From Ylistrum balloti (Eukaryota), in the NCBI RefSeq assembly GCF_031769215.1, contig NW_026782221.1:186001-250000 (forward strand): 64,000 bases of DNA, in the 5' to 3' direction. Below the pieces are notes generated by a model that did no database searches, was not told where the DNA came from, and saw only the letters and a program-made list of their open reading frames with translations. The translations under genes were made by a program, and so were the position numbers. The stretch's first letter is position 1, and each line of letters starts with the position of its first letter. Shown here piece by piece: positions 25,039-51,063 of this stretch.

Positions 25039-25860
25039 TCAGCAATACTTCGGGGTGATGATGGAATATAACACCATCTCACGGAATATCATACTCTCAT
25101 TCCACCGTCCGTCTGATGTCTGAACATGCTTCACAAACCCGTACTTCTGTCCGAGTTCCGAGCACGGAACACTGGCGTACTGGTTTAAAGGGATATACTT
25201 CTCCGCCTTGTGGGAATATGTAGGAGATTCACAAATATCCAAATCAACGGCATGTAATCCACTATTCAGGTTACAGGGCACAGGAAGTGAGAGGTGTGCA
25301 AACTTCCGCCGAACAGGTGGTAAGATCTTGTATATCGGTGCTGTAAACTGTGGACGTCTAACGTAGATCTCGTGATACATGTGTGTTTCATTGTTATTCC
25401 AGAAAAAGATATCAACGTATGGCCATCTAAATGGTTTGTATGGAAGGTGTTTGGATCTTGCGTCATAAAACTTCCAGGCATAATTAACTGGAGTAAAAAA
25501 GTCAAAATCAGGCTTCATTTTGGGTAAAATTTCAGCCAATCGATCTCTATCAGATGCGTTGACCAGGACATCAACGTCGTCATCCCAGGGTATAGGGCCA
25601 TGGTGCCTGAAGGATCCAATCAGAGTTCCACCTTCCAGTATATACGTGATATTATTCTCCGTCATTAATTTGTCGAAACGCTCCAAAGTCCGTAGTAAGT
25701 CATCAATATCATTATCCGTAATTTGTGGTTTAAACGGGCTGCTAGGCATTTCTTGTTTGTTCCGAAACTTGAATCCGAATATAAAAGCATAAATGAAGCC
25801 ACAGCTAAGCAGTACTTCAAGGCAAACTTTCCATATACATGGTTTTGGTATTGAGTACAT
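25039..25860 (-). CDS. LicD/fukutin-family phosphotransferase, paralogue 1 (type II membrane, single coding exon, 273 aa)
   Basis: LEGGTLIGSFRHHGPIPWDDDVDV and WPYVDIF match the LicD nucleotidyltransferase signature. N-terminal hydrophobic segment. The track start at 25875 is TTG; ATG is at 25860. An acceptor lies upstream at ~25923. Confidence 0.92.
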   Translation of the reverse strand: MYSIPKPCIWKVCLEVLLSCGFIYAFIFGFKFRNKQEMPSSPFKPQITDNDIDDLLRTLERFDKLMTENNITYILEGGTLIGSFRHHGPIPWDDDVDVLVNASDRDRLAEILPKMKPDFDFFTPVNYAWKFYDARSKHLPYKPFRWPYVDIFFWNNNETHMYHEIYVRRPQFTAPIYKILPPVRRKFAHLSLPVPCNLNSGLHAVDLDICESPTYSHKAEKYIPLNQYASVPCSELGQKYGFVKHVQTSDGRWNESMIFREMVLYSIITPKYC

Positions 25861-26824
25861 GTCAGCGTTCAACACTCAACTTGTATAAGCTGTGGACCAA
25901 GTCTGAGTAAACAGGATGTCACTACAACAAGAAACAAACATGTTTTAAGTTCAGAAACTCCTGGAACTGTTCGGATGAATGTTATCCACTTTCTTCACCA
26001 AGTTACAATCCAATAACAACCAAGGGCACATTGTAGTTACACAAACTTCTCTCATTCAATTTGGATAGCCGTGGTAAGAACCGATCTCCATCTATAAACA
26101 TCAAATGGGTGCTACTTCCTCGAAACTAACTGGTAACTTTAAAACGTTTCTGTATTATCTAATATTGTGAGAGAGGAACTACACTACAGCTGAGTATTGT
26201 GTAGAGGACGGTGCTGGAATGGATAGATAAGCTTAGCTTGCACACAGTCTGATCGTTCCCCTCGGGCTGTAGGCCGTTATGTCCATCCTTCTTGTCTAGG
26301 TGATAAAATTCTCCGCGACAACACACCGGATCATATTTCTACAGCCAAGGCGAAACCAAGTGATATTGACATGCATCCTGTCAGACAACTGTATCCACAT
26401 TGATTTACGTGTACCTGTAAACTGCTGTATTCTTTTCGTTTTTGCTGCGTAAACTATTTCCGATATCAGGTTTACATTCCGCAAATGAATATAAACTCAA
26501 TACAAAATTCGAACAAATTTGTTCTCGTGACCTGTTATGTTTTGATTAAACTCTATTGAGTTTATTTTGGAGGGGAAAGCGTTTACATGGACAAATGGAC
26601 GTAATTTTATACAGTAGGAACTAATGAGATATGTGTCATTTTCTGTCTTGGGGTGTCATGAAGGAATGTCATTCGTTGACGGAGGTTGTAAAGCCCTTGT
26701 TTTGTATCTCGCACTCTCATTGGAAGACACTGGTGCGGAGGTTACAATGGATCTCAATCGATTTGCCTTCATCTAGTCTTCAAACGGGGGCAGAAAATAC
26801 CAAGAAACAATTATAATCAAATCC

Positions 26825-28985
26825 ACAGGGACCCATATCAAACAAATCTACAGGACTCAGACCGAACAAACACACGGGGACCCAAATCAGACACACATAC
26901 AGGGACCCATAACAGACAAATCCACAGGGATACAGATCAATAGGGACCCAGATCAGACAAAAGCCACAGACACCCAGATCAGACAAAAAGCCATAGAGAC
27001 CCAGATAAGACAAAGTCACAGACACCCAGAGCAGACAAAAAGCCACAGACACCCAGATCAAACAAAAGCCACAGACACCCAGATCAAACAAAAGCCACAG
27101 ACACCCAGATCAGACAAATAGCCACAGACACCCAGATAAGACAAAGTCACAGACACCCAGATCAGACAAAAGCCACAGAGACCCAGATAAGGCAAAGTCA
27201 CAGACACCCAGATCAGACAAAAGCCACTGACACCCAGATCAGACAAAGTCACAGAGACCCAGATCAGACAAACTCACAGAGACCCCGATCAGACAATGTC
27301 ACAGAGACCCAGATCAGACAAAGTCACAGAGATCCAGATCAGACAAACTCACAGAGACCCCGATCAGACAATGTCACAGAGACCCGGATCAGACAAAGTC
27401 ACAGAGATCCAGATGAGACAAAGTCACAGAGACCCAGATCAGACAAAAGTCACAGACACCCAGATCAGACAAAGTCACAGACACCCAGATCAGACAAAGC
27501 CACAGAGACCCAGATCAGACAAAGTCACAGAGACCCAGATCAGACAAAGTCACAGAGATCCAGATGAGCCAAAGTCACAGAGACCCAGATCAGACAAAGC
27601 CACAGAGACCCAGATCAGACAAAGTCACAGAGACCCAGATCAGACAAAGTCACAGAGACCCAGATCACAGAGACCCAGATCAGACAAAGTCACAGAGATC
27701 CAGATGAGACAAAGTCACAGAGACCCAGATTTCACAAAGCCACAGAGACCCAGATCAGACAATGTCACAGAGACCCAGATCAGACAAAGTCACAGAGACC
27801 CAGATCAGACAAAGTCACAGAGACCCAGATCAGACAAACTCACAGAGACCCCGATCAGACAATGTCACAGAGACCCAGATCAGACAATGTCACAGAGACC
27901 CAGATCAGACAAAGTCACAGAGACCCAGATCAGACAAAGTCACAGAGACCCAGATCAGACAAAGCCACAGAGACCCAGATCAGACAAAGTCACAGAGACC
28001 CAGATCAGACAAAGTCACAGAGACCCAGATCAGACAAAGTCACAGAGATCCAGATCAGACAAACTCACAGAGACCCCGATCAGACAATGTCACAGAGACC
28101 CAGATCAGACAATGTCACAGAGACCCGGATCAGACAAAAGTCACAGACACCAAGATAAGACAAAGTCACAGACACCCAGATCAGACAAAGTCACAGAGAC
28201 CCAGATCAGACAAAGTCACAGAGACCCAGATCAGACAAAGTCACAGAGATCCAGATCAGACAAAGTCACAGAGATTCAGATGAGACAATGTCACAGAGAC
28301 CCAGATCAGACAAAGTCACAGAGACCCAGATCAGACAAAGTCACAAAGACCCAGATCAGACAAAGTCACAGAGACCCAGATCAGACAAAGTCACAGAGAT
28401 CCAGATCAGACAAAGTCACAGAGACCCAGATCAGACAAAGTCACAGAGACCCAGATCAGACAAAGTCACAGAGACCCAGATCAGACAATGTCACAGAGAC
28501 CCAGATCAGACAAAGTCAACGAGACCCAGATCAGACAAAGTCACAGAGACCCAGATCAGACAAAGTCACAGAGACCCAGATCAGACAAAGTCACAGAGAC
28601 CCAGATCAGACAAAGCCACAGAGACCCAGATCAGACAAAGTCACAGAGACCCAGATCAGACAATGTCACAGAGACCCAGATCAGACAAAGTCACAGAGAC
28701 CCAGATCAGACAAAGTCACAGAGACCCAGATCAGACAAAGTCACAGAGATCCAGATCAGACAAAGTCACAGAGACCCAGATCAGACAAAGTCACAGAGAC
28801 CCAGATCAGACAATGTCACAGAGATCCAGATCAGACAGTCACAGAGATCCATATCTGACAAAGTCACAGAGATCCATATCTGACAAAGTCACAGAGATCC
28901 AGATCAGACAAAGTCACAGAGACCCAGATCAGACAAAGTCACAGAGACCCAGATCAGACAAACTCACAGAGACCCAGATCAGAAA
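26825..28985. repeat. 25-bp minisatellite (ccagatcagacaaagtcacagagac)n, ~85 copies
   Basis: Direct reading; degenerate at the left edge and homogeneous further in. Confidence 0.97.
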
Positions 28986-30011
28986 ACCTTTTCAGAGATC
29001 CAGATCAAACAAGCGTTGGTGCTGAGGTTACAATGAATCTCTGTCGATTTGCCTGCAACTATTCTTCAAACGAACCGGGGATACAAAACGCCATAAAACA
29101 ATTAAAATCCTATCCACATTGGCCCATATCAGATCAGTAGATGATATCAACGTACTTAACAGAAATGTACGGTCCAGATAAAATATGGAAGGATTTACCA
29201 TTATTAGGATAATTAGCTTTGTTTGGAATGTTCTGACAGTTGTATGGAACACTGCAGAATCATAATTATAAAGGCAATACATTAGCGCCTCGACAGCTTT
29301 AACAACTTACCAAGTTATATCTCAAAGAACACATATTTAAACTGTTATCTGAAACTAAATGACTCCCAGCTTCTATTGCACTCATGCATTTATGTTTCGT
29401 TGCTATTTATGGAAGAGGAAGATGTAATTACAACAGATTCCAAAGCCAAGCTGAAATCGATTGGAGACATTCTTCGGGTTCTCGTGCTAATATATCTGTG
29501 TGATTGGAAGTGCCGAATATCTAGTACTTTTCTAAATAATGTGCGCCTTTTTCACGAACAACTTATGAGCAAATCAAATAAGATCTATATCAAGACTTCC
29601 TTCGTGGAAACATTAAGTTAGAATGAATTTTCTTCACTGGCGAAAACTTGTCACACTTCGTCCAATATTACTGAATGTTACAGTGTGCATCAAGTGATAT
29701 TGAAGAACAGGAACTCGTGTTCTCGGCTTGGTAAGCACAGAACTATGTTCACGTGTATTACGTAAGACATTTCACTCTCCCTAGTATCAAGTCGCGATAC
29801 CGGAGTGTTACGTTTTACCACGAGGCAACAGAAATCAATAGAACAATCGTATTACTTTTTGTAACAGTACAGTCTAATGTCATTTCCATGGCAATACTGT
29901 TTCCTCTAAAACACCGGAGTTGCTACCTATCCATTACACACTTGTTATGCATTGAAGCTTACATACGACTTAACATTGTAGTACCAGTATACTCGGACGT
30001 TACCCACGTAA

Positions 30012-33000
30012 ACAATGTAGTTGTCCAGTCAACCGAACCATGTAGTCATCCAATCAACTGAACCATGTAATTGTCCAGTCAACCGAACCATGTAGTCATC
30101 CAGTCAATTGAACCATGTAGTTGTCCAGTCAACTGAACCATGTAGTAGTCCGGTCAATTGAACCATGTAGTTGTCCAGTCAACTGAACCATGTAGTTGCC
30201 CAGTCAAGTGAACCATGTAGTTGTCCAGTCAAGTGAACCATGTAGTTGTCCAGTCAACAGAACCATGTAGTCATCTAATCAAATGAACTATGTAGTTGTC
30301 CAGTCAATTGAACCATGTAGTAGTCCAGTCGATTGAACCATGTAGTCATTCAGTCAACTGAACCATGTAGTTGCCCAGTCAACCGAACCATGTAGTCATC
30401 CAGTCAGCTGAACCATGTAGTTGTCCAGTCAACTGAACCATGTAGTTGTCCAGTCAACTGAACCATGTAGTTGTCCAGTCAATTGAACCATGTAGTAGTC
30501 CAGTCAAGTGAACCATGTAGTAGTCCAGTCAACTGAACCATGTAGTCATCTAGTCAACTGAACCATGTAGTAGTCCAGTAAACTGAACCATGTAGTAGTT
30601 CAGTCAACTGAACCATGTAGTCATCTAGTCAAATGAACCATGTAGTTGTCCAGTCAACTGAAACATGTAGTTGCCCAGTCAACTGAACCATGTAGTAATC
30701 CAGTCAACTGAACCATGTAGTAGTTCAGTCAACTGAACCATGTAGTCATCTAGTCAACTGAACCATGTAGTAGTCCAGTCAACTGAACCATGTAGTCATT
30801 CAGTCAACTGAACCATGTAGTTGCCCAGTCAACTGAATCATGTAGTAATCCAGTCTATTGAACCATGTAGTCATCTAGTGAACTGAACCATGTAGTTGTC
30901 CAGTCAACTGAACCATGTAGTAATCCAGTTAACTGAACCATGTAGTCATCTAGTCAACTGAACCATGTAGTTGTCCAGTCAACTGAACCATGTAGTCATC
31001 TAATCAACTGAACCATGTAGTTGTCCAGTCAACTGAACCATGTAGTAGTCCAGTCAACTGAACCATGTAGTAGTCCAGTCAACTGAACCATGTAGTAGTC
31101 CAGTCAACTGAACCATGTAGTCATCTAGTCAAATGAACCATGTAGTTATCCAGTCAACTGAAACATGTAGTTGCCCAGTCAACTGAACCATGTAGTTATC
31201 CAGTTAACTGAACCATGTAGTTGCCCAGTCAACCGAACCATGTAGTTGCCCAGTCAACTGAACCATGTAGTAGTCCAGTCAACTGAACCATGTAGTAGTC
31301 CAGTCAACTGAACCATGTAGTAGTCCAGTCAACTTAACCATGTAGTAGTCCAGTCAACTGAATCATGTAGTCATCTAGTCAACTGAATCATGTAGTTATC
31401 CAGTCAACTGAACCATGTAGTAATCCAGTCAATTGAACCATGTAGTCATCTAGTCAACTGAACCATGTAGTTGTCCAGTCAACTGAACCATGTAGTCATC
31501 TAGTCAACTGAACCATGTAGTTGTCCAGTCAACTGAACCATGTAGTAGTCCAGTCAACTGAACCATGTAGTAGTCCAGTCAACTGAACCATGTAGTCATC
31601 CAGTCAACTGAACCATGTAGTCATCTAGTCAACTGAACCATGTAGTTATCCAGTTAACTGAACCATGTAGTTGCCCAGTCAACTGAACCATGTAGTTGCC
31701 CAGTCAACCGAACCATGTAGTCATCCAGTCAATTGAACCATGTAGTAGTCCAGTCAACTGAACCATGTAGTAGTCCAGTCAACTGAACCATGTAGTAGTC
31801 CAGTCAACTGAACCATGTAGTAGTCCAGTCAACTGAACCATGTAGTCATCTAGTCAACTGAACCATGTAGTTGTCCAGTCAACTGAACCATGTAGTCATC
31901 TAGTCAACTGAACCATGTAGTTGTCCAGTCAACTGAACCATGTAGTAGTCCAGTCAACTGAACCATGTAGTAGTCCAGTCAACTGAACCATGTAGTCATC
32001 TAGTCAACTGAATCATGTAGTTATCCAGTTAACTGAACCATGTAGTTGCCCAGTCAACCGAACCATGTAGTTGCCCAGTCAACCGAACCATGTAGTCATC
32101 CAGTCAATTGAACCATGTAGTAGTCCAGTCAACTGAACCATGTAGTAGTCCAGTCAACTGAACCATGTAGTAGTCCAGTCAGCTGAACCATGTAGTTGCC
32201 CAATCAACCGAACCATGTAGTCATCTAGTCAACTGAACCATGTAGTTGTCCAGTCAACTGAACCATGTAGTAGTCCAGTCAACTGAACCATGTAGTAGTC
32301 CAGTCAACTGAACCATGTAGTAGTCCAGTCAACTGAACCATGTAGTCAACTAGTCAACTGAATCATGTAGTTATCCAGTCAACTGAACCATGTAGTTGTC
32401 CAGTTAACTGAACCATGTAGTTGCCCAGTCAACCGAACCATGTAGTTGCCCAGTCAACCGAACCATGTAGTAGTCCGGTCAACCGAACCATGTAGTAGTC
32501 CAGTCAACTGAACCATGTAGTAGTCCAGTCAACTGAACCATGTAGTAGTCCAGTCAACTGAACCATGTAGTCATCTAGTCAACTGAATCATGTAGTTGTC
32601 CAGTCAACTGAACAATGTAGTCATCTAGTCAACTGAACCATGTAGTTGTCCAGTCAACTGAACCATGTAGTAGTCCAGTCAACTGAACCATGTAGTAGTC
32701 CAGTCAACTGAACCATGTAGTCATCTAGTAAACTGAATCATGTAGTTATCTAGTCAACTGAACCATGTAGTCATCTAGTCAACTGAACCATGTAGTTGTC
32801 CAGTCAACTGAACCATGTAGTTGCCCAGTCAACCGAACCATGTAGTCATCCAGTCAATTGAACCATGTAGTAGTCCAGTCAACTGAACCATGTAGTCATC
32901 TAGTCAACTGAACCATGTAGTTATCCAGTTAACTGAACCATGTAGTTGCCCAGTCAACCGAACCATGTAGTTGCCCAGTCAACCGAACCATGTAGTCATC

Positions 33001-33730
33001 CAGTCAATTGAACCATGTAGTAGTCCAGTCAACTGAACCATGTAGTCATCTAGTCAACTGAACCATGTAGTTATCCAGTTAACTGAACCATGTAGTTGCC
33101 CAGTCAACCGATCCATGTAGTTGCCCAGTCAACCGATCCATGTAGTTGCCCAGTCAACCGAACCATGTAGTCATCCAGTCAATTGAACCATGTAGTAGTC
33201 CAGTCAACTGAACCATGTAGTCATCTAGTCAACTGAACCATGTAGTTATCCAGTTAACTGAACCATGTAGTTGCCCAGTCAACCGATCCATGTAGTTGCC
33301 CAGTCAACCGAACCATGTAGTCATCCAGTCAATTGAACCATGTAGTAGTCCAGTCAACTGAACCATGTAGTCATCTAGTCAACTGAACCATGTAGTTATC
33401 CAGTTAACTGAACCATGTAGTTGCCCAGTCAACCGAACCATGTAGTCATCTAGTCAACTGAACCATGTAGTTATCCAGTCAACTGAACCATGTAGTAGTC
33501 CAGTCAACTGAACCATATAGTCATCTAGTCAACTGAACCATGTAGTTGCCCAGTCAACTGAACCATGTAGTAGTCCAGTCAATTGAACCTTGTAGTAGTC
33601 CAGTAAACTGAACCATGTAGTTGTCCAGTCAACTGAACCATGTAGTAGTCCAGTCAGCTGAACCATGTAGTAGTCCAGTCAACTGAACCATGTAGTTTGT
33701 CCAGTCAAGTGAACCATGTAGTAGTTCAGT
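30012..33730. repeat. 25-bp minisatellite (cagtcaactgaaccatgtag+5 variable nt)n, ~148 copies
   Basis: Direct reading; variable slot ttgtc/tagtc/tcatc/ttgcc/ttatc/taatc. Confidence 0.97.
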
Positions 33731-37700: not shown

Positions 37701-38874
37701 TCTATTATTGGTGTAGAGTTAGATTTTTATTAGAACTGGTCACGGTACATGCTGCTTCACACTGCCTTACCATTAAGATAACGTGGGGTATCTGTTGTCG
37801 CCTTCTCTAAACCAGTTCTATGATAAATCATAAGTAGGTCCTGTTGGTCAGGGACATTCTGAAAGAAAAAGAGTAAATGGCCGAAATACAACAACTCGAC
37901 GATCACTATTTCAACACGTATGTAAATATTCAAAATAATGATAATAATGATATACAGAGGCCCAACCGTGGGGGAACGACGCTCAAACAGATCGTAGCAA
38001 CACGTTTAACCCACTCTGATGCCATTTACCACCATATAGACTGGTAAACTACGTAATGAAAAGTGTGTAAAACAGTAGAAAACGTGTTCACTGTACAACA
38101 TAGTGTACAACACGTATCGTACTTACATAAACATGGTGGGTTTCACCGGGTCTTTGTACTGCAGCATTTTTCGACCTTCCTCTCACGTCGATAGCCACAC
38201 ATGTGCGCGAGATGTACAGATGACATCGTCATCATGATGATTAGTCTTTCTCTGTCCATTTTATAACTTGCACTCCCAGTATTGATCGCGTGTGCCCAAA
38301 TCCGCACGCTGCACGGCACCGGATCCAGCTCCGCCAAGATGTTATATTGATTTTGGTCCCAGTGTTGATGATGTGATCGTCGAATAACGTTCTAGCCGAT
38401 CATTTTATCTATTGGGTGATAAGATGATCCTGTACTGCCCATCACCTGTTCATGTTACTTTGATTCATCACCTTATGTCATTTGAAAATCACTGCTAAAA
38501 GGTAATGATAAAACAAACTTCAACATTATTAGTCTATAATTATTCAAGAATATTCTAAACTAAGTATAGATTTTTCCACAAAACTACATACACAATAGGT
38601 ATATTTACTGTGCTGACGATATATGGATCTGCCTTCTCAAAGAGAAGATTTAGAAAAGTAAGTGACAATGACTGTGATATCTGATTCCTCAAAAAAAACC
38701 CAGTTATTTATGATAACTAAAAAAAGTATGTTATTGATGTTTCAGTCCGAGTTAATCTCTGCAGTCTCTAGAAATTATGTTTTACATGTAGAACAATTGA
38801 TAATGCATGTGTTATTTGATTATCAGCAAGACTTCCTCTGTCCTATTAATGTCATTGGTTTAAAACAGATATAG

Positions 38875-41175: not shown

Positions 41176-43353
41176 ACGTTTGTAACGTTACATCATTAAA
41201 TAAATAACTTTCCTCTGTTTTTTTGTTTTAATACAATGGGGTGTCGTGATGAAAAAAATCCTTTGCTCCAGTTGATCCGATATCCATGGGCTTGTTACCA
41301 ATATCTCCTTTCCGAGAAAGATGCAATACCTGACGGACAGGCATATAAGGAAATGGATGTTGATCAAAACTATGAGAAAGTTTCATGGTCAACATCATGA
41401 TTTCATATATCTTGGGGAATATCCTTTATGTATTACCTCTTGTGATACGAAGTAAAAGATGATTGTTAGTATGTCTTATATAAACAGTGACATTACTTAC
41501 TTGAATTGACCAAGGTTTATATGGTGGTTGTAGTCAATGATACAGAAGATGCTTTCTTTCTACTTCTCATCAATAAATATACGACAGACTTTTCAAATAC
41601 TTAAATCTTAAGACTGCACATGCGTGATAATAAATCCCGAGTGAAAATGAAAAATGATTTCCTTAACAGTTATTCTATACAGTCTCACATTCCAGTTGAT
41701 AAATGGTAGATGACAGGTTTGTATTTCCAACAAAGTATTCAATCATCCATATGATTCCATATTTGGATTGCCATTGCTAGTCTTATTTGTGTGTGTATCA
41801 CTACATAGTGAATACTACTTGTCTACATTTAGGATAATTAACAACACATCATCAATTGTAAAAATGTCATGAGATTTTTAATAATCTAACATAACAATCA
41901 ATACCTGTTTAAGGGCCTGTCAGTCCTTTAACAAGTATCAATAATATGTGTACATATGTACACCTTCACGTATCTATAATTGACATAACCAAATGGTTAT
42001 ATGGCAGTGTTACAAACATTATGTACTTTTTTATGTTACATTTGTATATATACAATATAGTGTTTTTTACATTCATATGTATACGCATGAAAGAATCATG
42101 CTCTGATCATGATCATCTCACTTCTGTCCTATGCCTGAACAGTACTCCATAAATAGTGACTCCTGCAACATCTCAATCATAGGCACAAGAGAGTGATTTA
42201 TGTTATACATATACTGTTATATTTCTTGGCCGCTGCAATGTGTTAAATTTCTCCATATGTCACCAGTTAGCAGTTGTCTGGAGCCATGAACTTCACAAAC
42301 CTGTCATACATGTGTATAAAGCATCCTTTTATACAATTTCAAGTTAAAGTAAACATGCTGTGTCATCATATATCTGGGCAGATAAGTTAAATGTTATTTG
42401 TTGTTGACTTTTCCTTCTATCAAAACTGGCCACAGTGAACATCGTCTACAAATTTTATCACTGATCATATAAATTTTCATTTGGAGTGATATCTTTTCAA
42501 TACAGAGCTGCTTTCAAATTCATAAGTTGACTACATTGTCACTTTCATATTAATAGCATGGGTATACAAAGCAATTACTCATTATACACAAGACTTTATA
42601 ATTTAAAGAGGGACTAACACAAAATATAAGGCTATTTAATGTTAAGTACAGGAAAAGTGACAGAATAAACTTTTGATTAAAGGATTTACTCTCTCATCGT
42701 AAAATGTAACAATACACAATTTCTCAGTTTCAGATGAAAGATTATGATATAATCTGGACAAACCATTGAAGTAGAATACGTAAGTTGACATATATCATCG
42801 TTTTGCTCCTCATACATAGTTTTTATAAAGTGAATCAAGTATCCAGCACATCAATCTGAACGCTATCTCATATTGCTTTACAATCAACATAATAATTCAC
42901 TACTCTCCTCCTGTATAAAAATGTATTCAAGTTGTTTTGGGAACTTTTTTTACAGTTGAAAAAAGGCAGTTTCCCCATTCAAAATTAAGGCAAGCTTAGA
43001 ATGAAAAATTTCATAAGATTTAACATGTGTAGTGAACAAAGTATGTCCCCAAAAAATATCTGAAAATTTCTTTTAAGGCATTTATCAAATCACATATAAA
43101 GATCTCCAAGCTACAGTCTTACTATAGATATTTAAAGACATCTTAACATTTGTTTCCTTTTCACTTACAAAAGCTACTTTAAGTTATTACCTTGTGAGGT
43201 AGTAACAAGTAGCTGTATGATGATGTTAAACTTTCAAAACTTCTCACTGCAATGACCAAGAACCAGAAGCCACTGAAACTATTCTTCTCCAGTCTACATG
43301 TCATAGGCATAGTAATCCACGACAGATCCGAAACAGATTAAAGGTCAGGTAGG

Positions 43354-46300
43354 TCACACAATTTTTCCATACTTCTGTACAAATTGTTCCAGGTCCTTAG
43401 TCGGAATGCTTTTTGCTGCTTCATTAATCTACAGTAAAAATAAACACTTTTTTAAACTTGTGAGTCACAGTTCACATAGATAATAAGTATACCTTTCATT
43501 CAGTCATGATCATTAAGCTTGTTTTCATAAATTGTATTGGTTCCTTAAATTTGACTGACTAAATCAGATGTAAAACTTGATATGGAGTTATTTTTATCTC
43601 TTTTTTTATCAAGAGATTCAGGACATATTTTTACGTTTTTCTAAAGTTTTTTATTTCATTTTTCAAAGTAGGTACATGTGACCATTGACCATGCATTGCT
43701 AATTCTTTGATACTTCATTTTGAATATAAACTAAATCTGTTTAGGTGTTCATGAGAAATCTTTGCATATATTTATAGGATGAACACATAGACTAAACACT
43801 AACTATTCACACCCTATCTGATTGTGTGTGACTAAACAGTAACTATTCACATCCAAGGACCCTATCTGAATGTGTGTGACTAAACAGTAACTATTCACAC
43901 CCAAGGACCCTATCTGATTGTGTGTGACTAAACACTAACTATTCACACCCAAGGACCCTATCTGATTGTGTGTGACTAAACAGTAACTATTCACACCCAA
44001 GGACCCTATCTGATTGTGTGTGACTAAACACTAACTATTCACACCCAAGGACCCTATCTGATTGTGTGTGACTAAACACTAACTATTCACACCCAAGGAC
44101 CCTATCTGATTGTGTGTGACTAAACAGTAACTATTCACACCCAAGGACCCTATCTGATTGTGTGTGACTAAACACTAACCATTCACACCCTATCTGATTG
44201 TGTGTGACTAAACAGTAACTATTCACACCCAAGGACCCTATCTGATTGTGTGTGACTAAACAGTAACTATTCACACCCAAGGACCCTATCTGATTGTGTG
44301 TGACTAAACAGTAACAATTCACACCCAAGGACCCTATCTGATTGTGTGTGACTAAACACTAACTATTCACACCCAAGGACCCTATCTGAATGTGTGTGAC
44401 TAAACAGTAACTATTCACACCCAAGGACCCTATCTGATTGTGTGTGACTAAACAGTAACAATTCACACCCAAGGACCCTATCTGATTGTGTGTGACTAAA
44501 CAGTAACTATTCACACCCAAGGACCCTATCTGATTGTGTGTGACTAAACAGTAACAAGTCACACCCAAGGACCCTATCTGATTGTGTGTGACTAAACAGT
44601 AACTATTCACACCCAAGGACCCTATCTGATTGTGTGTGACTAAACACTAACTATTCACACCCAAGGACCCTATCTGATTGTGTGTGACTAAACAGTAACA
44701 ATTCACACCCAAGGACCCTATCTGATTGTGTGTGACTAAACAGTAACTATTCACACCCAAGGACCCTATCTGATTGTGTGTGACTAAACAGTAACTATTC
44801 ACACCCAAGGACCCTATCTGATTGTGTGTGACTAAACACTAACTATTCACACCCAAGGACCCTATCTGAATGTGTGTGACTAAACAGTAACTATTCACAC
44901 CCAAGGACCCTATCTGATTGTGTGTGACTAAACAGTAACTATTCACACCCAAGGACCCTATCTGATTGTGTGTGACTAAACAGTAACTATTCACACCCAA
45001 GGACCCTATCTGATTGTGTGTGACTAAACAGTAACTATTCACACCCAAGGACCCTATCTGATTGTGTGTGACTAAACAGTAACTATTCACACCCAAGGAC
45101 CCTATCTGATTGTGTGTGACTAAACACTAACTATTCACACCCAAGGACCCTATCTGATTGTGTGTGACTAAACAGTAACAATTCACACCCAAGGACCCTA
45201 TCTGATTGTGTGTGACTAAACAGTAACTATTCACACCCAAGGACCCTATCTGATTGTGTGTGACTAAACAGTAACTATTCACACCCAAGGACCCTATCTG
45301 ATTGTGTGTGACTAAACACTAACTATTCACACCCAAGGACCCTATCTGAATGTGTGTGACTAAACAGTAACTATTCACACCCAAGGACCCTATCTGATTG
45401 TGTGTGACTAAACAGTAACTATTCACACCCAAGGACCCTATCTGATTGTGTGTGACTAAACAGTAACTATTCACACCCAAGGACCCTATCTGATTGTGTG
45501 TGACTAAACAGTAACTATTCACACCCAAGGACCCTATCTGATTGTGTGTGACTAAACAGTAACAATTCACACCCAAGGACCCTATCTGATTGTGTGTGAC
45601 TAAACACTAACTATTCACACCCAAGGACCCTATCTGATTGTGTGTGACTAAACAGTAACAATTCACACCCAAGGACCCTATCTGATTGTGTGTGACTAAA
45701 CACTAACTATTCACACCCAAGGACCCTATCTGAATGTGTGTGACTAAACAGTAACTATTCACACCCAAGGACCCTATCTGATTGTGTGTGTATGTAATTA
45801 CTACAAATAAATTACAAAGGCTAAAAAGAATATCTCTTTTCAACGGTTTTCATTTTGGAGAGTAATTTTTCATTTTATACAGAATTGGTAGCAATAAAAT
45901 GGATTAGACTTGTTTGCTTTACTAAATGAATACTCCATGCATTGTGTGGTATCATTTGGAGCGAATCATTTTGTGGTTTTCTGGTATCTAGCTACATCTA
46001 TTTATGTAGCCGTTAAAACTACAAGACTGAAGCTTTTCTGCTGATTTGTTTTTTAGTTTCTTTTTAAAGTTTAATTAATGGTATAGTTGCTGTATATAAG
46101 TATGAATGTAGCACTGACATTAAAAAATCTCATCATATACCAATACCAAAACACTGCAACTGACCTCTCTCCACTTGCTGATTCCTGTATCCACTGTTCG
46201 TTTAGTGCCAAGAAGCTTTTTCTGTCGCAGAGCCACGTGCTCCCTAAGCAGGGTGTTCTGTTGCTCCAGCTGACTGATGACATGTTCAAGCTGTGCTTTC

Positions 46301-49140
46301 TCTTTCACTTTGACAGAGATATTGTACACGTGACTGTCTCGTTGGGGGTCACCTGATGGCCGCCTAACACAAGCACAATTATTACAATTTTTCAGATGCT
46401 ATCATAAAAATTATGATTCCAATGTTCTTTAATACAATTCCATGTATAACATCCAAATTCATTTTTTCTACATTTTTACCTACATACATGTTCATTTGTA
46501 TATGTATATATATCTTTCTAATATTTAAATTCTCACCATGCTTCCTTTTCGTTGTCTTTCTGACTCTCGATTATTCCATCCAAGTCATTAAGTATTTTTT
46601 CCATCTGTTCTTCTGCAAACATCAACATCACTTCCTCCTTCAAACAGATAAGTACAATAACAGCTCAAAAAACAATCATATGTTTGTGTAAAATATTGTA
46701 TATTCTATATACCAGTATATGTAAGAGTTGAACCAATGCATATGACATTTACCTTATAATTGGTTCACTTCATGCAATTTCAAGAAAACAATTTTCAAAA
46801 CAAATTATTTTCACTGATCATGCTACCATTTTTGAAACTATTATCATACCTATGTGCACCAGCTTTTATTTTCCATTACCAAAAAATCACAAGTCATAAA
46901 ATAGCAACATGAACACCTGTCTTTTGGGTTATTGGAGCAGAACAATCAAGCTTACATTTTAAATTTTGTTTTAAAATGACTCACACTGATGTGACTGTCT
47001 AGTTGCTTTGTGAGCTGCCCATGTATCTTTTTGAGGACTTCAGGATTCTTCTTGTGAATAGGGCGAAGATGTTTTTGAAATAACTGTAGTCTAAAATAAG
47101 TAAAGGGAAAAAATTATTACATGATCCACTTTTAAAATAATTTTCTTATTAAACAGTCTGTAATATTTCTATACAATCATACAGATATATACATGTATCT
47201 TGTCTTCAGTGAAATTCAACTGTTGAAAACAACAGTACATGTAGCTGAGCTCATTCTACACTTCAATGTGATATTTCTTTGTGGGTAAAGGTTCCAATAT
47301 AATCATCATTTCTTCTCTCTCTGACTATGTAGATCTAGAGTCAGGGTTTTCCATAATTTTGTTAGTAGTAGGCTGTGTAGTGAAAGTAGGAGGCTGGTCT
47401 GCCGTGTACGTGTAGTCATGTACGTAACATTATTATGGAACTGGATTGGTGTAGGCGTCCAAATGATCAAAGTAGCCAGTCAAATTGGCCGGCGACTGGC
47501 TCTTATGGAAAACCCTGTAAAGTACAATATGTTTCTGAATTTCATTCAGGGCTCTCGATCTGCCAGATTTGGTACCGATATTCGGCCCCATTCCCAATGC
47601 AAAATATTATCTTTTTTCCTAATTTAGACCCCAAGTTTTCCCAATTCTAAGGAAAACGCCGCTATTTTCCCCGATTCTAAGGGCCCCTGGCCCCAGTCCC
47701 AAAATGGGGTGTGAGAGCCCTGTCATTTGTTACAAAATGTAATACATAATTGACAATAACTAGCAAGAGAGGAAGAGAATTATCTATACTTTGCAATATA
47801 TATGTACGGTACTCAAAATTAAAATTTCTAGCAAGATTTGGCTAAATGATTTTCATACTGAACCAAAAGGGCATGTAACAAAAATCTTAAAAAGTTCAAA
47901 ACTACAGGAAACAATCTAGCTTTGTTCATTTATATTACATGTAATAACAAGCTAGTGTATAAGTGTTCTAGTTTTGAATTGAAGTATTGTTAGATGTGCC
48001 TGTGATTGCACAGTGGCCTGCATTGCAGACAAACCAGATCTCCAACACTATATAAATTCAGGCATATATACACACAGTCCTGCAAATACAAATACAGGTC
48101 TCAAAACCTAAGTCAAGTCTCATCAGAAAGGAAAATTAGATTTGAAAGTATAGCTAAGTCTGACGTTATTTCATAAGTGAACAATTGGTTACTCTGGCCG
48201 TGGTCGTAAGTTACATATTGACTAAGATCGGAGGGTAAGAAGACACATGACACATTAAATACACTTGTGTGTATTCAAATACCTCCCTCCCCTCCTTCAT
48301 CTCTTACCAATGTCAGGTAATTAGTTACACAGTAAAATGAGCAGATCAGCATGGCTTGTACATAGTGTTAAATACAGCCCCTGTCACTCAGCTGACACAT
48401 TATGCTTCTTTGGTTCAGTTGGTAGAGCTATGGATAATATCTCCTTGGAGGCCAGGGTTCAATTTCTGTCTACACAATTAGTGCAGGAATGTTATACTTC
48501 TGTTCTTTCACACTGTAACTCATTTAAACAAGTCCCTATGTGTGATTCAACTACATTTTTGTATATAGTCAAAACGATAAACGAAATCTATGTACTTGTG
48601 GTGTAATTTTTCATCACAAAATCCCACACTGATATATGTCTCTGACTGAAATTTACCCAATTAGTCCCTATATAAAACGTGCATCCGCTTAGACGTTTCA
48701 TATCGTGATTTTTAACCCTTGAAATTAGATATTTAGTATCTATGTTATTGTCGAACCTTAAAGCCTTCGAGTTTCGACAATAACATTGATCAATCAAATA
48801 TCCAATTACAAAAGTGAAAAATCATGATATGAACTGTCTAAACGAATGCATATTTCAGATGTTAACATTCGCAGGCATTTCGGACTATCATGCTCTTGTT
48901 CGATGCCACAAGCTTAGCCTATGGTAATCAAAACAATACACGAAATCAATTACATATTTTCATCACCAAAAACAGCAGCGCTACATTGTTGGTGTGGAGG
49001 ACGGTGACATACTTTGCAGATGAAATTATCTTTTTCCTGGCTTGTGCCAAAGCCTTGTCAAGAATCTGCATTCTTCCTATTGGTTCGGGCTTCTGGGATT
49101 CATCATTCGTTGTCTCCATGGACTCACTTTCGTCTGCCAT
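43354..49140 (-). CDS. PMF1: Polyamine-modulated factor 1 / Nnf1 (MIS12 kinetochore complex subunit), 5 exons, 202 aa
   Basis: Exons 49140-49013, 47090-46985, 46637-46537, 46363-46165, 43428-43354. All introns are GT-AG, frame-compatible, total 609 nt. Protein GRMQILDKAL...KQLDSHISEEVML...LNDLDGII...EAWRPSGDP...QLEQQN follows the Nnf1/PMF1 pattern, including WRPSG. Confidence 0.88.
43790..45790. repeat. 48-bp minisatellite (aaacagtaactattcacacccaaggaccctatctgattgtgtgtgact)n, ~41 copies, 480-bp higher-order period, in PMF1 intron 4
   Basis: Direct reading; the variant tgaatgtg recurs at a 480-bp spacing, as do the repeat-derived ORF starts at 44616, 45096 and 45576. Confidence 0.97.
47342..47517. 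mobile_element. MITE, 176 bp, perfect 15-bp TIR CAGGGTTTTCCATAA
   Basis: TIRs at 47342-47356 and 47503-47517; flanks tagagt / taaagt (6-bp duplication with one mismatch). Confidence 0.75.
47547..47722. mobile_element. MITE, 176 bp, 10-bp TIR CAGGGCTCTC, 5-bp TSD TCATT
   Basis: TIRs at 47547-47556 and 47713-47722; tcatt at 47542-47546 and 47723-47727. Confidence 0.75.
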
Positions 49141-49440
49141 GATCTTCCCGCGGAGACGTTCAAAATTTCCCACTGCTCCTAGTTCGTTTGAAGTTTGTCG
49201 CCTACGGTTTGAAGTAAGCACTTTCGCGATCCTGATCTTTAATTTCCAGTTGGAAACGAAACTATGTTGGAATGGGTTATGAAGAATTACATTTATATCG
49301 ACGAAACTAGAGCCGAGCAACCACTGATTGTATACAATAGAATAATTTACTCCTGAGTAAGAATGATAAATAAATATAATACATTATCAAAATATATCGT
49401 GTCGTTTTAGTTAGGTAGTCTTAATTTTGTATTAACCAAG
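49141..49440. promoter_or_regulatory. Probable bidirectional promoter shared by PMF1 and FKRP
   Basis: Divergent start codons are only 300 bp apart. Inferred from geometry; no TSS data. Confidence 0.55.
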
Positions 49441-51063
49441 ATGTCAGCGTCCATCTACAAAGAATCCCAAAAGAGAGGAAACAAAAAACATGGTTTCAAA
49501 TCTTATGCTGAGTTCAGTTTCTTCACACGAAAACGGTTTTTGAAAATTGGTAGCTTACAGTACATGAAATGTCTTATGGTTGTGCTGGTGATCAATTTGG
49601 TGATATTTTTGTACCTGATGTATGCGCACAATCTTTTCTCTGTTGACCAATACGTGTTATCTGCTGACGGTGCTTCACACTATCACAGAGAAGATGCCCA
49701 ACATCTTGTTCTCGCAAGGGAAGTAACAGTTGTCATTAGAGAATTCGAAGATTTCGAAAACCGTGTACATGAAACGGTAAACAGTTTTAAACTGATATCA
49801 CCATATATGACCGTGATTGTAATCTCAGATAACATTCCTTACCCACCACTGAAGTTAAACTTCAGCCAAACGGTGCACTTTGTGAATCTGCAACTGCAGC
49901 CAATGTTAACCAATCCTACAGATGTCATCAAAAGATTGATTGTAACCCCATACACACTGTTCGTTCCTGATGGCACTAACATAACAAGGTCCAAACATTT
50001 ACTCCATGCTGTCAAAAACATGAAAACGAGAAAGTTTATAAAAGCTTTAGCCATCCCAGTTGGTTATGAAAAGCTCAACTGTCCTGGAATGGATGTGCAC
50101 TTAAGATCATGGTCTGTTGATTTCACTAACTTTGTCGGAGGTGAAGGAATGTGTGACTATGTGCAAGGCAACCATGCACTGTTAATGTTGACTCATGACC
50201 TTTTTGAATTGACAAGTCCATTCGAACGTCCACTGTACGTCTCATTGTATATGCAATTGACACTGAGGAGATGGAAAACAGGGGTATTTTCAGGCAATGT
50301 TTTTATGCCAACAACCATATTTAAAGATTTCCGAAGTGAATGGAAACATAAACATATGGAAGAATTAAGACTTGAAAATACTATGAGAAAATTTGAAATT
50401 AAAAAGGTATCTTATGATAAACAAAAAGAGTTTTATTATGGATGCACAAAAGATACAGAGAGATGCTTTGGAACAGTCATCAACGATATGCCTGATTTTT
50501 TATATAGAGGAAAATGGACTCCACCTTGTTGTTTAGAAGCAATAAGAGAAACAGCCAGACATGTTTTTAATATGTTGAATAAATGTTCTGCTCGTTACTG
50601 GCTAGAAGGGGGCAGCTTATTGGGAGCAGTAAGACACAAGGACATCATTCCATGGGACTATGATGTTGACATCGGTGTTTATAAAGAAGACCTAGACAAA
50701 TGTGACCAGTTTGTAACATTGACAAAGAGAAACAGTTTTACTGATGAAGCAGGATTCCACTGGGAAAAGGCAACTGAAGGAGAATTTTTTAGAGTCCATT
50801 ACAGTACTGTTAATCGAAATCATGTAGATATATTCCCTTTTTATCCAAAGTCTGGAATAATGACAAAAAGAACGTGGTTAAAAACTCATAGACAGGATAC
50901 AGAATTTCCGGAAAATTATCTGAAACCACTTACGAAAGTGGAGTTCATTGGAATGAATGTTTCTGCACCGAATAATATCAGACAATTTTTAGAATATAAG
51001 TTTGGAAAAGGGGTTATAGAAACACCAAGGTTTCCCAACTCAGAAATTGTGGTTGGTGGCTAA
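49441..51063 (+). CDS. FKRP: Fukutin-related protein (ribitol-5-phosphate transferase FKRP), single coding exon, 540 aa
   Basis: TM anchor, stem with VTVVIREFEDFEN, Cys cluster GCTKDTERCFGTV...WTPPCCL, catalytic YWLEGGSLLGAVRHKDIIPWDYDVDIG, then WEKATEGEFFRVHYS..N..HVDIFPF and HRQDTEFPE. Confidence 0.95.
   Translation: MSASIYKESQKRGNKKHGFKSYAEFSFFTRKRFLKIGSLQYMKCLMVVLVINLVIFLYLMYAHNLFSVDQYVLSADGASHYHREDAQHLVLAREVTVVIREFEDFENRVHETVNSFKLISPYMTVIVISDNIPYPPLKLNFSQTVHFVNLQLQPMLTNPTDVIKRLIVTPYTLFVPDGTNITRSKHLLHAVKNMKTRKFIKALAIPVGYEKLNCPGMDVHLRSWSVDFTNFVGGEGMCDYVQGNHALLMLTHDLFELTSPFERPLYVSLYMQLTLRRWKTGVFSGNVFMPTTIFKDFRSEWKHKHMEELRLENTMRKFEIKKVSYDKQKEFYYGCTKDTERCFGTVINDMPDFLYRGKWTPPCCLEAIRETARHVFNMLNKCSARYWLEGGSLLGAVRHKDIIPWDYDVDIGVYKEDLDKCDQFVTLTKRNSFTDEAGFHWEKATEGEFFRVHYSTVNRNHVDIFPFYPKSGIMTKRTWLKTHRQDTEFPENYLKPLTKVEFIGMNVSAPNNIRQFLEYKFGKGVIETPRFPNSEIVVGG

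What the first reader, a model, noticed from the sequence alone, without database searches (positions are those of the whole stretch)
25039..51063. FKRP flanked by two short LicD paralogues: candidate invertebrate glycan phosphodiester-modification cluster
Seen: three LicD/fukutin-superfamily genes within 26 kb, all with single coding exons and intact GGtLiG..RH...IPWDxDxD motifs. Known: FKRP transfers ribitol-5-phosphate from CDP-ribitol; bacterial LicD transfers phosphocholine from CDP-choline; mollusc glycans and glycolipids carry phosphocholine and aminoethylphosphonate whose transferases are, to my knowledge, not identified. Inference: the two stem-less Golgi-type paralogues are candidates for those activities and may have arisen locally from, or been kept beside, FKRP.
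Basis: partly seen in the sequence, partly recalled or inferred. Interest (0 to 1): 0.7.

Follow-up and report, generated by a model that had tools for sequence, protein, structure and literature searches.

The report
Scallop FKRP beside two LicD genes
A scallop chromosome carries the muscular-dystrophy-type enzyme gene FKRP about 12 and 24 kb from two intact, conserved genes of a large uncharacterised family of related Golgi-type enzymes. The closeness is a scallop-only rearrangement, not a sign of common local origin or of an ancient gene cluster.

Summary
All three ORFs are real, intact and under strong purifying selection (dN/dS 0.05-0.08). One is a textbook FKRP orthologue with stem domain, zinc-finger cysteines and catalytic Asp residues. 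LicD-A (273 aa) and LicD-B (387 aa) are type-II membrane proteins with a LicD catalytic core.

The title's geometry is wrong. Both paralogues lie on one side of FKRP. An unrelated gene, PMF1/Nnf1, sits between LicD-B and FKRP, head-to-head with FKRP.

A and B belong to a large family (at least 934 clusters at 50% identity). Named members are molluscs, annelids, flatworms, a rotifer and one green alga. A and B are old paralogues, not scallop tandem duplicates (AU p = 0.0016). Their profile is closer to bacterial LicD than to FKRP, and they lack every FKRP-specific feature.

The order Nnf1, B, A is shared by three scallop genera, with FKRP beside Nnf1 wherever the fetched DNA reaches. In a clam and a gastropod FKRP lies 13-26 Mb from the LicD genes. 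No LicD lies within 10 kb of FKRP in an oyster or a mussel.

Local origin from FKRP is therefore not supported. The phosphocholine/aminoethylphosphonate-transferase idea stays plausible but untested, and was already proposed for nematode LicD homologues. No RNA evidence was obtained.

The parts
25039..25875 (-). LicD-A: intronless CDS. The likely start is the ATG at 25860, giving 273 aa; the stop is at 25039-25041. N-terminal signal anchor at residues ~8-32, LicD catalytic core, Cys-containing C-terminal extension.
   Evidence: Pfam LicD 62.4 bits; P0115 identical; orthologues 76-81% identical in Pecten, Argopecten and Mizuhopecten; dN/dS 0.082 against P. maximus; one hydrophobic segment; 4 N-glycosylation sequons.
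36537..37700 (-). LicD-B: intronless CDS of 387 aa. It has a 46-aa cytoplasmic tail, a TM segment at 47-65, a ~90-aa low-confidence stem, and a LicD catalytic core plus family-specific C-terminal extension at 145-385.
   Evidence: 52.1 bits; 81-82% identical full-length orthologues in Mizuhopecten and Argopecten; AF2 core pLDDT above 90; best PDB match FKRP 6kam, E 4e-8; dN/dS 0.048-0.076; all 4 differences inside the ORF in a second DNA run are synonymous.
49441..51063 (+). FKRP orthologue, single coding exon. It is 540 aa from the first ATG; the annotated model starts at Met42 (49564) and is 499 aa.
   Evidence: FKRP_N 2e-60 plus LicD; 88% identical to P. maximus FKRP, 42-45% to vertebrate and hemichordate FKRP over ~91%; zinc-finger Cys335/342/363/364, Arg341, Asp406/408/410/463 and His483/Gln485 invariant or nearly so; dN/dS 0.065.
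43323..49147 (-). PMF1/Nnf1 gene, unrelated to LicD, lying between LicD-B and FKRP. Conserved exon blocks are at 43323-43430, 46142-46371, 46509-46643, 46964-47104 and 49010-49147. Exon 1 is ~300 bp from the FKRP ORF, head-to-head.
   Evidence: 83-88% blastn blocks against P. maximus; Pfam Nnf1 on the P. maximus model; open frames; 87-89% aa identity; Nnf1 adjacent in Gigantopelta, Saccostrea and Argopecten.
26818..33732 (.). Two satellite arrays of 25-bp units (26818-29012 and 30011-33732) between LicD-A and LicD-B. They inflate the gene spacing and produce the spurious long ORFs at 27296-29025.
60420..63256 (-). Aldehyde dehydrogenase exons flanking the cluster beyond FKRP. In Mactra an ALDH gene with 59-64% aa identity in two exons lies next to the B-type LicD instead.
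14948..19043 (.). Aldose-1-epimerase exons flanking the cluster beyond LicD-A, the same neighbour as in P. maximus.

Best explanation
The window is a scallop (Pectinidae) chromosomal segment with the gene order aldose epimerase, LicD-A, LicD-B, PMF1/Nnf1, FKRP, ALDH; Nnf1 and FKRP are head-to-head.

FKRP is the orthologue of the vertebrate CDP-ribitol:ribitol-5-phosphate transferase.

LicD-A and LicD-B are two anciently diverged members of a large, uncharacterised eukaryotic LicD subfamily. Members are intronless here and have an N-terminal signal anchor, a nucleotidyltransferase-fold core with hGG(S/T), PWDDDxD and a third Asp, and a conserved Cys/His-containing C-terminal extension.

Inferred mechanism, not shown: in the Golgi/ER lumen each binds a CDP- or CMP-activated alcohol through two divalent cations held by the Asp cluster. 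It then transfers the phospho-alcohol to a hydroxyl of a glycan, releasing CMP, as FKRP and bacterial LicD/Mf1 do. The donor could be phosphocholine, phosphoethanolamine, aminoethylphosphonate, glycerol-phosphate or ribitol-phosphate. It cannot be read from sequence.

The proximity to FKRP arose by intrachromosomal rearrangement in the scallop lineage. That rearrangement brought the ancestral Nnf1-FKRP pair next to an ancestral LicD-ALDH neighbourhood. It is not a duplication of FKRP and not an ancient functional cluster.
For: Identity and integrity.

Selection: dN/dS is 0.082 (A), 0.048-0.076 (B) and 0.065 (FKRP). All four polymorphisms inside ORF B are synonymous.

Topology: one N-terminal hydrophobic segment in each protein, luminal N-glycosylation sequons including the family-conserved N-x-T of FFxENxTH, and conserved Cys.

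Fold: the AF2 core has pLDDT above 90. The only close PDB match is the FKRP catalytic domain, followed by the LnuA and ANT(2'') nucleotidyltransferases.

Catalytic residues: Asp204/206/208/259 of B correspond to FKRP Asp360/362/364/416, which are essential by mutagenesis (PMC6965139). They are invariant in 37 family members.

Family age and breadth: hits in molluscs, annelids, flatworms and a rotifer, with no deuterostome or ecdysozoan hits. There are 934 50%-identity clusters at E<1e-30, including a green-alga protein with two such domains.

A and B are not tandem duplicates: the AU test rejects A+B monophyly (p = 0.0016). B groups with the Mactra LicD.

Not derived from FKRP: hhalign gives E 1.3e-28 for A/B against bacterial LicD, 1.7e-17 for A/B against FKRP, and 2.2e-20 for FKRP against bacterial LicD.

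Synteny: the same order and orientation occur in P. maximus, and Nnf1, B, A in Argopecten. The genes are dispersed in Gigantopelta (15.7, 28.5 and 32.6 Mb) and Mactra (3.9 and 29.9 Mb). No LicD lies within 10 kb of FKRP in Saccostrea or Mytilus. Mactra LicD sits next to ALDH, as the scallop cluster does.
Against: No transcript evidence was obtained. The only run holding the sequence is a low-coverage DNA run.

No enzymatic, localisation or glycomic data exist for any family member that I could find.

The bacterial alignment used for the profile comparison was drawn from hits to A and B, so it is biased towards similarity to them.

Deep nodes of the family tree are weakly resolved, and LicD-A sits on a long stem branch (1.24 substitutions per site).

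FKRP and short LicDs share a chromosome in the gastropod, the clam and the scallops. An ancient but loose linkage is therefore not excluded.
Confidence: 0.72

Rival explanations
1. One reading: A and B are the mollusc enzymes that put phosphocholine and/or aminoethylphosphonate (or phosphoethanolamine) on N-/O-glycans or glycolipids, using CDP-choline, CDP-ethanolamine or CMP-AEP.
For: The LicD fold and complete catalytic residues are present. The four-Asp PWDDDxD motif is shared with bacterial LicD and with Mf1, the only biochemically characterised PC transferase, which also accepts CDP-ethanolamine (PMC11982090). FKRP has DYDVD instead. The best NCBIfam hit is Mf1. Named members come from molluscs, annelids and flatworms; zwitterionic glycan modifications are reviewed for invertebrates including molluscs (PMC6994554), and PC-modified N- and O-glycans are documented in the trematode Fasciola (PMC10755494). 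The many paralogues per genome fit the need for 'a range of PC-transferases' (PMC10755494). The animal enzymes are unidentified (PMC6994554).
Against: Nothing in the sequence specifies the donor. LicD-family enzymes also transfer ribitol-phosphate, and yeast Mnn4 acts in mannosyl-phosphate transfer (PMC2794190, PMC6965139). The Mf1 hits are far below the equivalog cut-off (45-50 bits against 225). A microsomal PC-transferase activity in C. elegans pointed to phosphatidylcholine as a potential donor rather than CDP-choline (as cited in PMC6149742). A green alga has members too. No nematode members appeared in the searches, although nematodes are the classic PC-glycan animals.
Confidence: 0.3
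2. A and B arose from FKRP by local tandem duplication followed by loss of the stem domain, and the cluster is the remnant of that event.
For: The three genes are physically close and all have intronless CDS. They share the catalytic motif. FKRP and short LicDs are on the same chromosome in the gastropod, the clam and the scallops.
Against: A/B identity to FKRP is confined to ~60-170 residues at 23-37%. The A/B profile is closer to bacterial LicD than to FKRP. The zinc-finger loop, Arg295 equivalent and Rbo-interacting His/Gln, described as 'conserved in only FKRP orthologues' (PMC6965139), are absent. Each gene has its own orthologues in distant taxa. An unrelated gene intervenes, and its head-to-head pairing with FKRP is ancestral. 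Tight linkage is absent outside scallops.
Confidence: 0.04
3. The arrangement is a selected, co-regulated functional gene cluster for glycan phosphodiester modification.
For: Order and orientation are conserved in three scallop genera despite dS of ~0.8-1.4. All three genes are under strong constraint.
Against: The cluster is absent in the oyster, mussel, clam and gastropod examined. Housekeeping-type genes are interleaved or adjacent (PMF1/Nnf1, ALDH, aldose epimerase). Kilobases of satellite DNA separate the genes. Conservation of microsynteny within one family is expected without selection. No expression data were obtained.
Confidence: 0.1
4. The A/B-type family entered eukaryotes from bacteria by ancient horizontal transfer of a licD gene, and later acquired a signal anchor and a Cys-containing C-terminal extension.
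For: The CDS is intronless in the mollusc gene models examined. The profile is closer to bacterial LicD than to FKRP. NCBI names several members after Rickettsia LicD-like proteins (RT0683-like, RP688-like). The eukaryotic distribution is patchy: Spiralia plus a prasinophyte alga.
Against: FKRP is also intronless and also scores well against bacterial LicD. The family-specific C-terminal extension is shared by the alga and the animals, which argues for an old eukaryotic family. The bacterial set used was chosen by similarity to A and B. No rooted phylogeny was made.
Confidence: 0.2

Closest known systems
FKRP (human fukutin-related protein, PDB 6KAJ-6KAN), CDP-ribitol:ribitol-5-phosphate transferase
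   Same: ORF 3 is its orthologue: it has the stem domain, zinc-finger Cys4, the Arg295 equivalent and all four essential Asp. A and B share the NTase-fold catalytic core, the hGG(S/T) motif and the Asp cluster. FKRP is their only close match among solved structures.
   Different: A and B have no FKRP_N stem domain, no zinc-finger loop and no conserved Rbo-interacting His/Gln. They have DDDxD instead of DYDVD. They carry a different C-terminal extension with conserved Cys and His.
Bacterial LicD phosphocholine transferases (H. influenzae LicD, S. pneumoniae LicD1/LicD2) and Mycoplasma fermentans Mf1
   Same: Pfam LicD. The PWDDDxD motif has four Asp, as in Mf1 Asp50/51/52/54 (PMC11982090). This is the best profile-profile partner of the A/B family (E 1.3e-28) and the best NCBIfam hit.
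   Different: A and B are eukaryotic type-II membrane proteins with luminal glycosylation sequons and an extra C-terminal region. The Mf1 equivalog cut-off is not reached. There is no lic operon context. Only the first ~60 positions of the Pfam LicD profile match directly.
Fukutin (FKTN)
   Same: It also has a LicD-type catalytic domain without a zinc finger (PMC6965139) and is a type-II Golgi protein.
   Different: No vertebrate or other deuterostome protein appeared among the 114 and 46 hits to B and A, although the length window covered FKTN. Orthologues of A and B are named 'uncharacterized' or 'RT0683-like' rather than fukutin.
Putative LicD-like PC transferases of Caenorhabditis elegans
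   Same: The same hypothesis: an animal LicD homologue as the glycan phosphocholine transferase, postulated from homology and unconfirmed (PMC6149742).
   Different: No nematode sequence appeared in the searches with A or B, so they are probably a different LicD subfamily. This was not tested directly.
Yeast Mnn4 (LicD-family protein in mannosyl-phosphate transfer)
   Same: A eukaryotic secretory-pathway LicD-family member acting on N-/O-glycans (PMC2794190).
   Different: It uses a sugar-phosphate from GDP-mannose and is fungal. It was not compared here.

Membership tests
LicD/FKTN/FKRP superfamily (Pfam PF04991), for A, B and FKRP | Match to the LicD profile above the curated threshold | tested here: met
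   62.4, 52.1 and 67.2 bits against a cut-off of 22.6.
LicD/FKTN/FKRP superfamily, for A and B | NTase catalytic signature: hG[GS], DxD and a third acidic residue, plus the extra Asp equivalent to FKRP Asp360 | tested here: met
   G189, D204, D206, D208 and D259 (B numbering) are invariant in 37 family members. Their roles are defined in PMC6965139.
LicD/FKTN/FKRP superfamily, for B | Nucleotidyltransferase fold of the catalytic domain | tested here: met
   AF2 core pLDDT is above 90. Foldseek's top 13 hits are FKRP chains (E 4e-8), followed by LnuA and ANT(2'').
LicD/FKTN/FKRP superfamily, for A and B | Transfer of a phospho-alcohol from a CDP-activated donor | not testable with these tools
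   Needs a recombinant enzyme assay.
FKRP, for ORF 49441-51063 | FKRP_N stem domain plus a LicD catalytic domain | tested here: met
   PF22921 at 2e-60 over residues 91-324, and LicD at 385-426 and beyond.
FKRP, for ORF 49441-51063 | C4 zinc-finger loop with the acceptor-binding Arg, and the Rbo-interacting His/Gln | tested here: met
   C335, R341, C342, C363, C364, H483 and Q485 are invariant across 18 FKRPs from molluscs to vertebrates. They are mapped to human C289, R295, C296, C317, C318, H435 and Q437.
FKRP, for LicD-A and LicD-B | Stem domain, zinc-finger loop and Rbo-interacting loop | tested here: not met
   There is no FKRP_N hit. In the hhalign alignment the two distal zinc-finger Cys align to non-Cys residues, and the region holding the other two has no counterpart. 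The HxQ loop is not conserved.
Fukutin (FKTN), for LicD-A and LicD-B | Orthology to vertebrate FKTN | tested here: inconclusive
   No deuterostome hits appeared although the length window covered FKTN. No FKTN sequence or structure was available for a direct test.
Mf1-type cholinephosphotransferase (NCBIfam NF045866 equivalog), for A and B | Score above the equivalog cut-off | tested here: not met
   45.5 and 49.8 bits against a cut-off of 225. Only the N-terminal ~60-100 profile positions match.
Conserved functional gene cluster (FKRP plus LicD paralogues) | Linkage retained across lineages beyond the taxonomic family | tested here: not met
   The arrangement is present in the window species and Pecten, and Nnf1, B, A is present in Argopecten. 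It is absent in Mactra, Gigantopelta, Saccostrea and Mytilus.
Expressed gene (A, B) | Transcript evidence | tested here: inconclusive
   The only run found is genomic DNA. Function is inferred from dN/dS and conservation only.

The most novel reading that the evidence does not exclude
The A/B-type LicD family, with hundreds of diverged members in molluscs, annelids, flatworms and rotifers, comprises the long-sought Golgi transferases that add zwitterionic phosphodiester or phosphonate groups (phosphocholine, phosphoethanolamine, aminoethylphosphonate) to spiralian N-/O-glycans and glycolipids. Paralogues such as A and B would differ in donor or acceptor.
Probability: 0.3. Interest if true: 0.75.

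Novelty: new member of a known kind. Interest (0 to 1): 0.4.

Why it matters
Glycobiology reviews from 2019 to 2025 describe the enzymes that decorate invertebrate and helminth glycans with phosphocholine, phosphoethanolamine or aminoethylphosphonate as unidentified. These groups are immunologically active and are discussed as drug targets in flukes.

This work defines a large, conserved and strongly constrained family of luminal LicD-type enzymes. The family has complete catalytic machinery and is clearly distinct from FKRP. It gives concrete intronless ORFs that are easy to express and to assay against CDP-choline, CDP-ethanolamine, CMP-AEP, CDP-glycerol and CDP-ribitol.

The linkage to FKRP adds little. 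It is a lineage-specific rearrangement and should not be used as evidence of shared function.

Tried and rejected
Its contigs run at even depth through intergenic DNA, so it is a DNA run and nothing can be said about expression, transcript ends or UTR introns.

Representative search: the top 150 hits were all family members at E<1e-71. The search showed the family's size but did not reach the boundary with FKRP, FKTN or bacterial LicD.

A rooted superfamily phylogeny was therefore not made. A tree of the A/B family, FKRP and bacterial LicD alone cannot show which two are sisters, so profile-profile scores were used instead.

Paper searches: searches combining LicD with mollusc or flatworm terms returned no listed paper that mentions LicD.

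ENA contig of 271,776 bp: it holds both an FKRP (P0229) and a short LicD (P0047), but it could not be read because no DNA was served. No LicD was called within 10 kb of its FKRP.

Pseudogene or retrocopy reading of the intronless ORFs: rejected on dN/dS and on intronless orthologues across molluscs.

Bacterial contamination: rejected, because the ORFs are embedded among conserved animal genes at syntenic positions in three scallop genomes.

P. maximus LicD-B orthologue: it contains an N run (assembly gap). I left it unfilled and used only the part beyond it.

Full report
OBSERVATION

The three ORFs exist as described.
- LicD-A is at 25039-25875 (-). The listing starts at a GTG. The first ATG, at 25860, gives 273 aa, which is exactly the genome's own gene model P0115.
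- LicD-B is at 36537-37700 (-) and is 387 aa.
- FKRP is at 49441-51063 (+). It is 540 aa from the first ATG; the annotated model is 499 aa (P0161).

Pfam places all three in LicD, at 62, 52 and 67 bits against a threshold of 22.6. Only the third carries the FKRP stem domain (FKRP_N, 2e-60). The catalytic motifs are intact in all three.

Best hits are 76-92% identical to proteins of Pecten maximus, Mizuhopecten yessoensis and Argopecten irradians, so the window is from a scallop. Orthologous gene models are co-linear with the ORFs, which confirms single coding exons.

GEOMETRY

I aligned the window to the P. maximus loci and read the frames of the conserved blocks. This gives the following map:
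- aldose-1-epimerase exons at 14.9-19.0 kb
- LicD-A (-)
- two 25-bp-unit satellites at 26.8-29.0 and 30.0-33.7 kb, which create the spurious ORFs at 27.3-29.0 kb
- LicD-B (-)
- a 34-bp-unit satellite
- PMF1/Nnf1 (-, five conserved exon blocks at 43.3-49.15 kb, with a 48-bp-unit satellite in an intron)
- FKRP (+), about 300 bp from Nnf1 exon 1 and head-to-head with it
- ALDH exons at 60.4-63.3 kb (-)

FKRP is therefore not flanked by the paralogues. Both lie on one side of it, and an unrelated gene lies between LicD-B and FKRP.

ARE THE GENES FUNCTIONAL?

dN/dS against P. maximus is 0.082 for A, 0.048 for the C-terminal half of B and 0.065 for FKRP. Against Argopecten, full-length B gives 0.076.

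A second DNA data set (X1) differs at four positions inside ORF B, and all four are synonymous.

Each protein has one N-terminal hydrophobic segment, which indicates a type-II signal anchor. The luminal parts carry N-glycosylation sequons, including the family-conserved N-x-T in FFxENxTH, and conserved cysteines.

No RNA evidence could be obtained. The only run found is genomic.

WHAT A AND B ARE

A and B are 33% identical to each other over ~230 residues (E 2e-41). They are 23-37% identical to FKRP, and only around the catalytic motif.

Homology searches retrieve full-length relatives in gastropods, cephalopods, bivalves, a chiton, annelids (Paralvinella, Ridgeia), trematodes, cestodes and a rotifer. 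After these the next hits are bacterial LicD proteins. No deuterostome or ecdysozoan protein appears.

A profile search of 1.84 billion representatives finds 934 clusters at E<1e-30, so the family is large and diverse. One hit is a green-alga protein (Pseudoscourfieldia marina, 729 aa). It holds two complete copies of the domain, including the family-specific C-terminal extension.

In a 37-member alignment the invariant residues include G189, G193, R196, P202-W203-D204-D205-D206, D208 and D259 (B numbering), plus two Cys. A conserved His is nearly invariant. D204, D206, D208 and D259 correspond to human FKRP Asp360, 362, 364 and 416, all essential by mutagenesis (PMC6965139).

An AlphaFold model of B has pLDDT above 90 across residues ~145-380. 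Its only close match in the PDB is the FKRP catalytic domain (E 4e-8), followed by the LnuA and ANT(2'') nucleotidyltransferases.

RELATION TO FKRP

ORF 3 has every FKRP hallmark: the stem domain, the four zinc-finger cysteines, the Arg295 equivalent, the Rbo-interacting His/Gln and the catalytic Asp residues. All are conserved from molluscs to vertebrates.

[quoted passage not shown] They carry PWDDDxD, the four-Asp form found in bacterial LicD and in the characterised Mycoplasma PC transferase Mf1 (PMC11982090). FKRP has PWDYDVD.

Profile-profile comparison gives:
- A/B family against bacterial LicD: E 1.3e-28 (score 203)
- A/B family against FKRP: E 1.7e-17 (score 135)
- FKRP against bacterial LicD: E 2.2e-20 (score 153)

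This is the opposite of what a derivation of A and B from FKRP predicts. One caveat applies: the bacterial set was chosen from hits to A and B.

A AND B ARE OLD PARALOGUES

In a maximum-likelihood tree of 51 family members, the scallop B clade groups with other bivalve sequences, including the Mactra gene. The scallop A clade sits elsewhere on a long stem. Forcing A+B into one clade costs 28 log-likelihood units, and the AU test rejects it (p = 0.0016) (quick tree). Deep nodes are otherwise weakly resolved.

SYNTENY

P. maximus has ALDH, FKRP, (Nnf1), LicD-B, LicD-A, aldose epimerase within ~19 kb, in the same order and orientations as the window. Its LicD-B is interrupted by an assembly gap, which I left unfilled. 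The gap explains the chimeric Nnf1+LicD gene model LOC117333919.

Argopecten has Nnf1, LicD-B, LicD-A in the same order and orientation.

Outside scallops the picture differs:
- In the gastropod Gigantopelta aegis, FKRP (15.71 Mb, head-to-head with Nnf1, with a WD40 gene downstream) and two short LicDs (28.47 and 32.61 Mb) share a chromosome but are 13-17 Mb apart.
- In the clam Mactra antiquata, FKRP (3.95 Mb, WD40 gene downstream) and a B-type LicD (29.87 Mb) are 26 Mb apart. That LicD lies next to an ALDH gene whose exons are 59-64% identical to the window's ALDH.
- The oyster Saccostrea has the head-to-head Nnf1-FKRP pair, and the mussel Mytilus has KY, FKRP, WD40. Neither has any LicD ORF within 10 kb of FKRP.

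The simplest history is as follows. Nnf1-FKRP(-WD40) and LicD-ALDH were separate neighbourhoods on one ancestral chromosome. Rearrangement in the scallop lineage brought Nnf1-FKRP in between ALDH and LicD-B. The tight cluster is thus lineage-specific.

MECHANISM (INFERRED)

By homology with FKRP (structure and mutagenesis) and with Mf1/LicD (biochemistry and genetics), A and B should bind a CDP- or CMP-activated alcohol with two divalent cations on the Asp cluster. They should then transfer the phospho-alcohol to a glycan hydroxyl in the secretory pathway.

Shown here: fold, residues, predicted topology and selective constraint.

Not shown: transcription, localisation, donor and acceptor.

These are the four-Asp motif, the taxa in which the family is found, the many paralogues per genome, and the stated lack of known enzymes (PMC6994554, PMC10755494, PMC11982090). 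However, LicD enzymes use several donors, and a PC-transferase activity in C. elegans microsomes pointed to phosphatidylcholine as donor (as cited in PMC6149742). The same paper notes that LicD homologues were already postulated as nematode PC transferases and remain unconfirmed. I put this reading at about 0.3.

VERDICT

A and B are good but untested candidates for glycan phosphodiester transferases. They did not arise from FKRP, and the linkage is a scallop-specific juxtaposition.

Novelty: new members of a known superfamily, in an uncharacterised subfamily. Interest is moderate (0.4). It rests on the family as an experimentally tractable candidate for an open question, not on the cluster.

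Noticed in passing
window 49010-49564; L004, L009, L002: PMF1/Nnf1 and FKRP are head-to-head, a few hundred bp apart, in the scallops, the oyster Saccostrea and the gastropod Gigantopelta. This looks like an old bidirectional gene pair. A ~712-717-aa WD40 gene lies downstream of FKRP in Gigantopelta, Mactra and Mytilus but is replaced by ALDH in scallops.
   Followed up: partly
L002 3668-9536 (Pecten maximus LR736846.1): The P. maximus gene model LOC117333919 (P0004, 394 aa, Pfam Nnf1 plus a faint LicD hit) is a chimera of Nnf1 exons and the C-terminal half of the LicD-B orthologue. It was evidently caused by an N run (assembly gap) inside the LicD-B ORF.
   Followed up: yes
window 26818-29012, 30011-33732, 38875-41181, 43811-45790: There are four large satellite arrays with units of 25, 25, 34 (and 48/95) and 48 bp, each up to 3.7 kb. 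The ORFs of 520, 245 and 173 aa at 27296-29025 are artefacts of the first array. In the second DNA run (X1), contigs show 49- and 102-bp length differences in the 39.0-39.3 kb array.
   Followed up: partly
P0372 (Pseudoscourfieldia marina, 729 aa): A prasinophyte green alga encodes a protein with two tandem copies of the A/B-type LicD domain, including the C-terminal extension (26% identity to LicD-B over ~250 aa each). The family is therefore not confined to animals.
   Followed up: partly
window 49441-49563: The 41 codons upstream of the annotated FKRP start (Met42) are in frame. tblastn aligns the P. maximus locus across all 540 residues at 88% identity overall, so the real start may be the first ATG.
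   Followed up: partly
P0283, P0416, P0417, P0418 (Biomphalaria): Several short A/B-type LicD proteins of Biomphalaria are deposited under the name 'fukutin-related protein', although they are 303-336 aa long, too short to carry the FKRP stem domain. KAI8789232 and KAI8789234 lie on one contig, which suggests tandem paralogues in the snail.
   Followed up: no
window 4744-10093 (-): Two long overlapping ORFs (1156 and 630 aa) lie on the minus strand upstream of the cluster. They are probably a retrotransposon and were not examined.
   Followed up: no
P0295 and P0201 (Haliotis asinina): A short LicD (named 'RT0683-like') and FKRP of Haliotis asinina are reported on contigs of identical length (89,013,229 bp), so they are probably on the same chromosome. 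This would extend the loose same-chromosome association to a second gastropod. Coordinates were not retrieved because the look-ups were exhausted.
   Followed up: no
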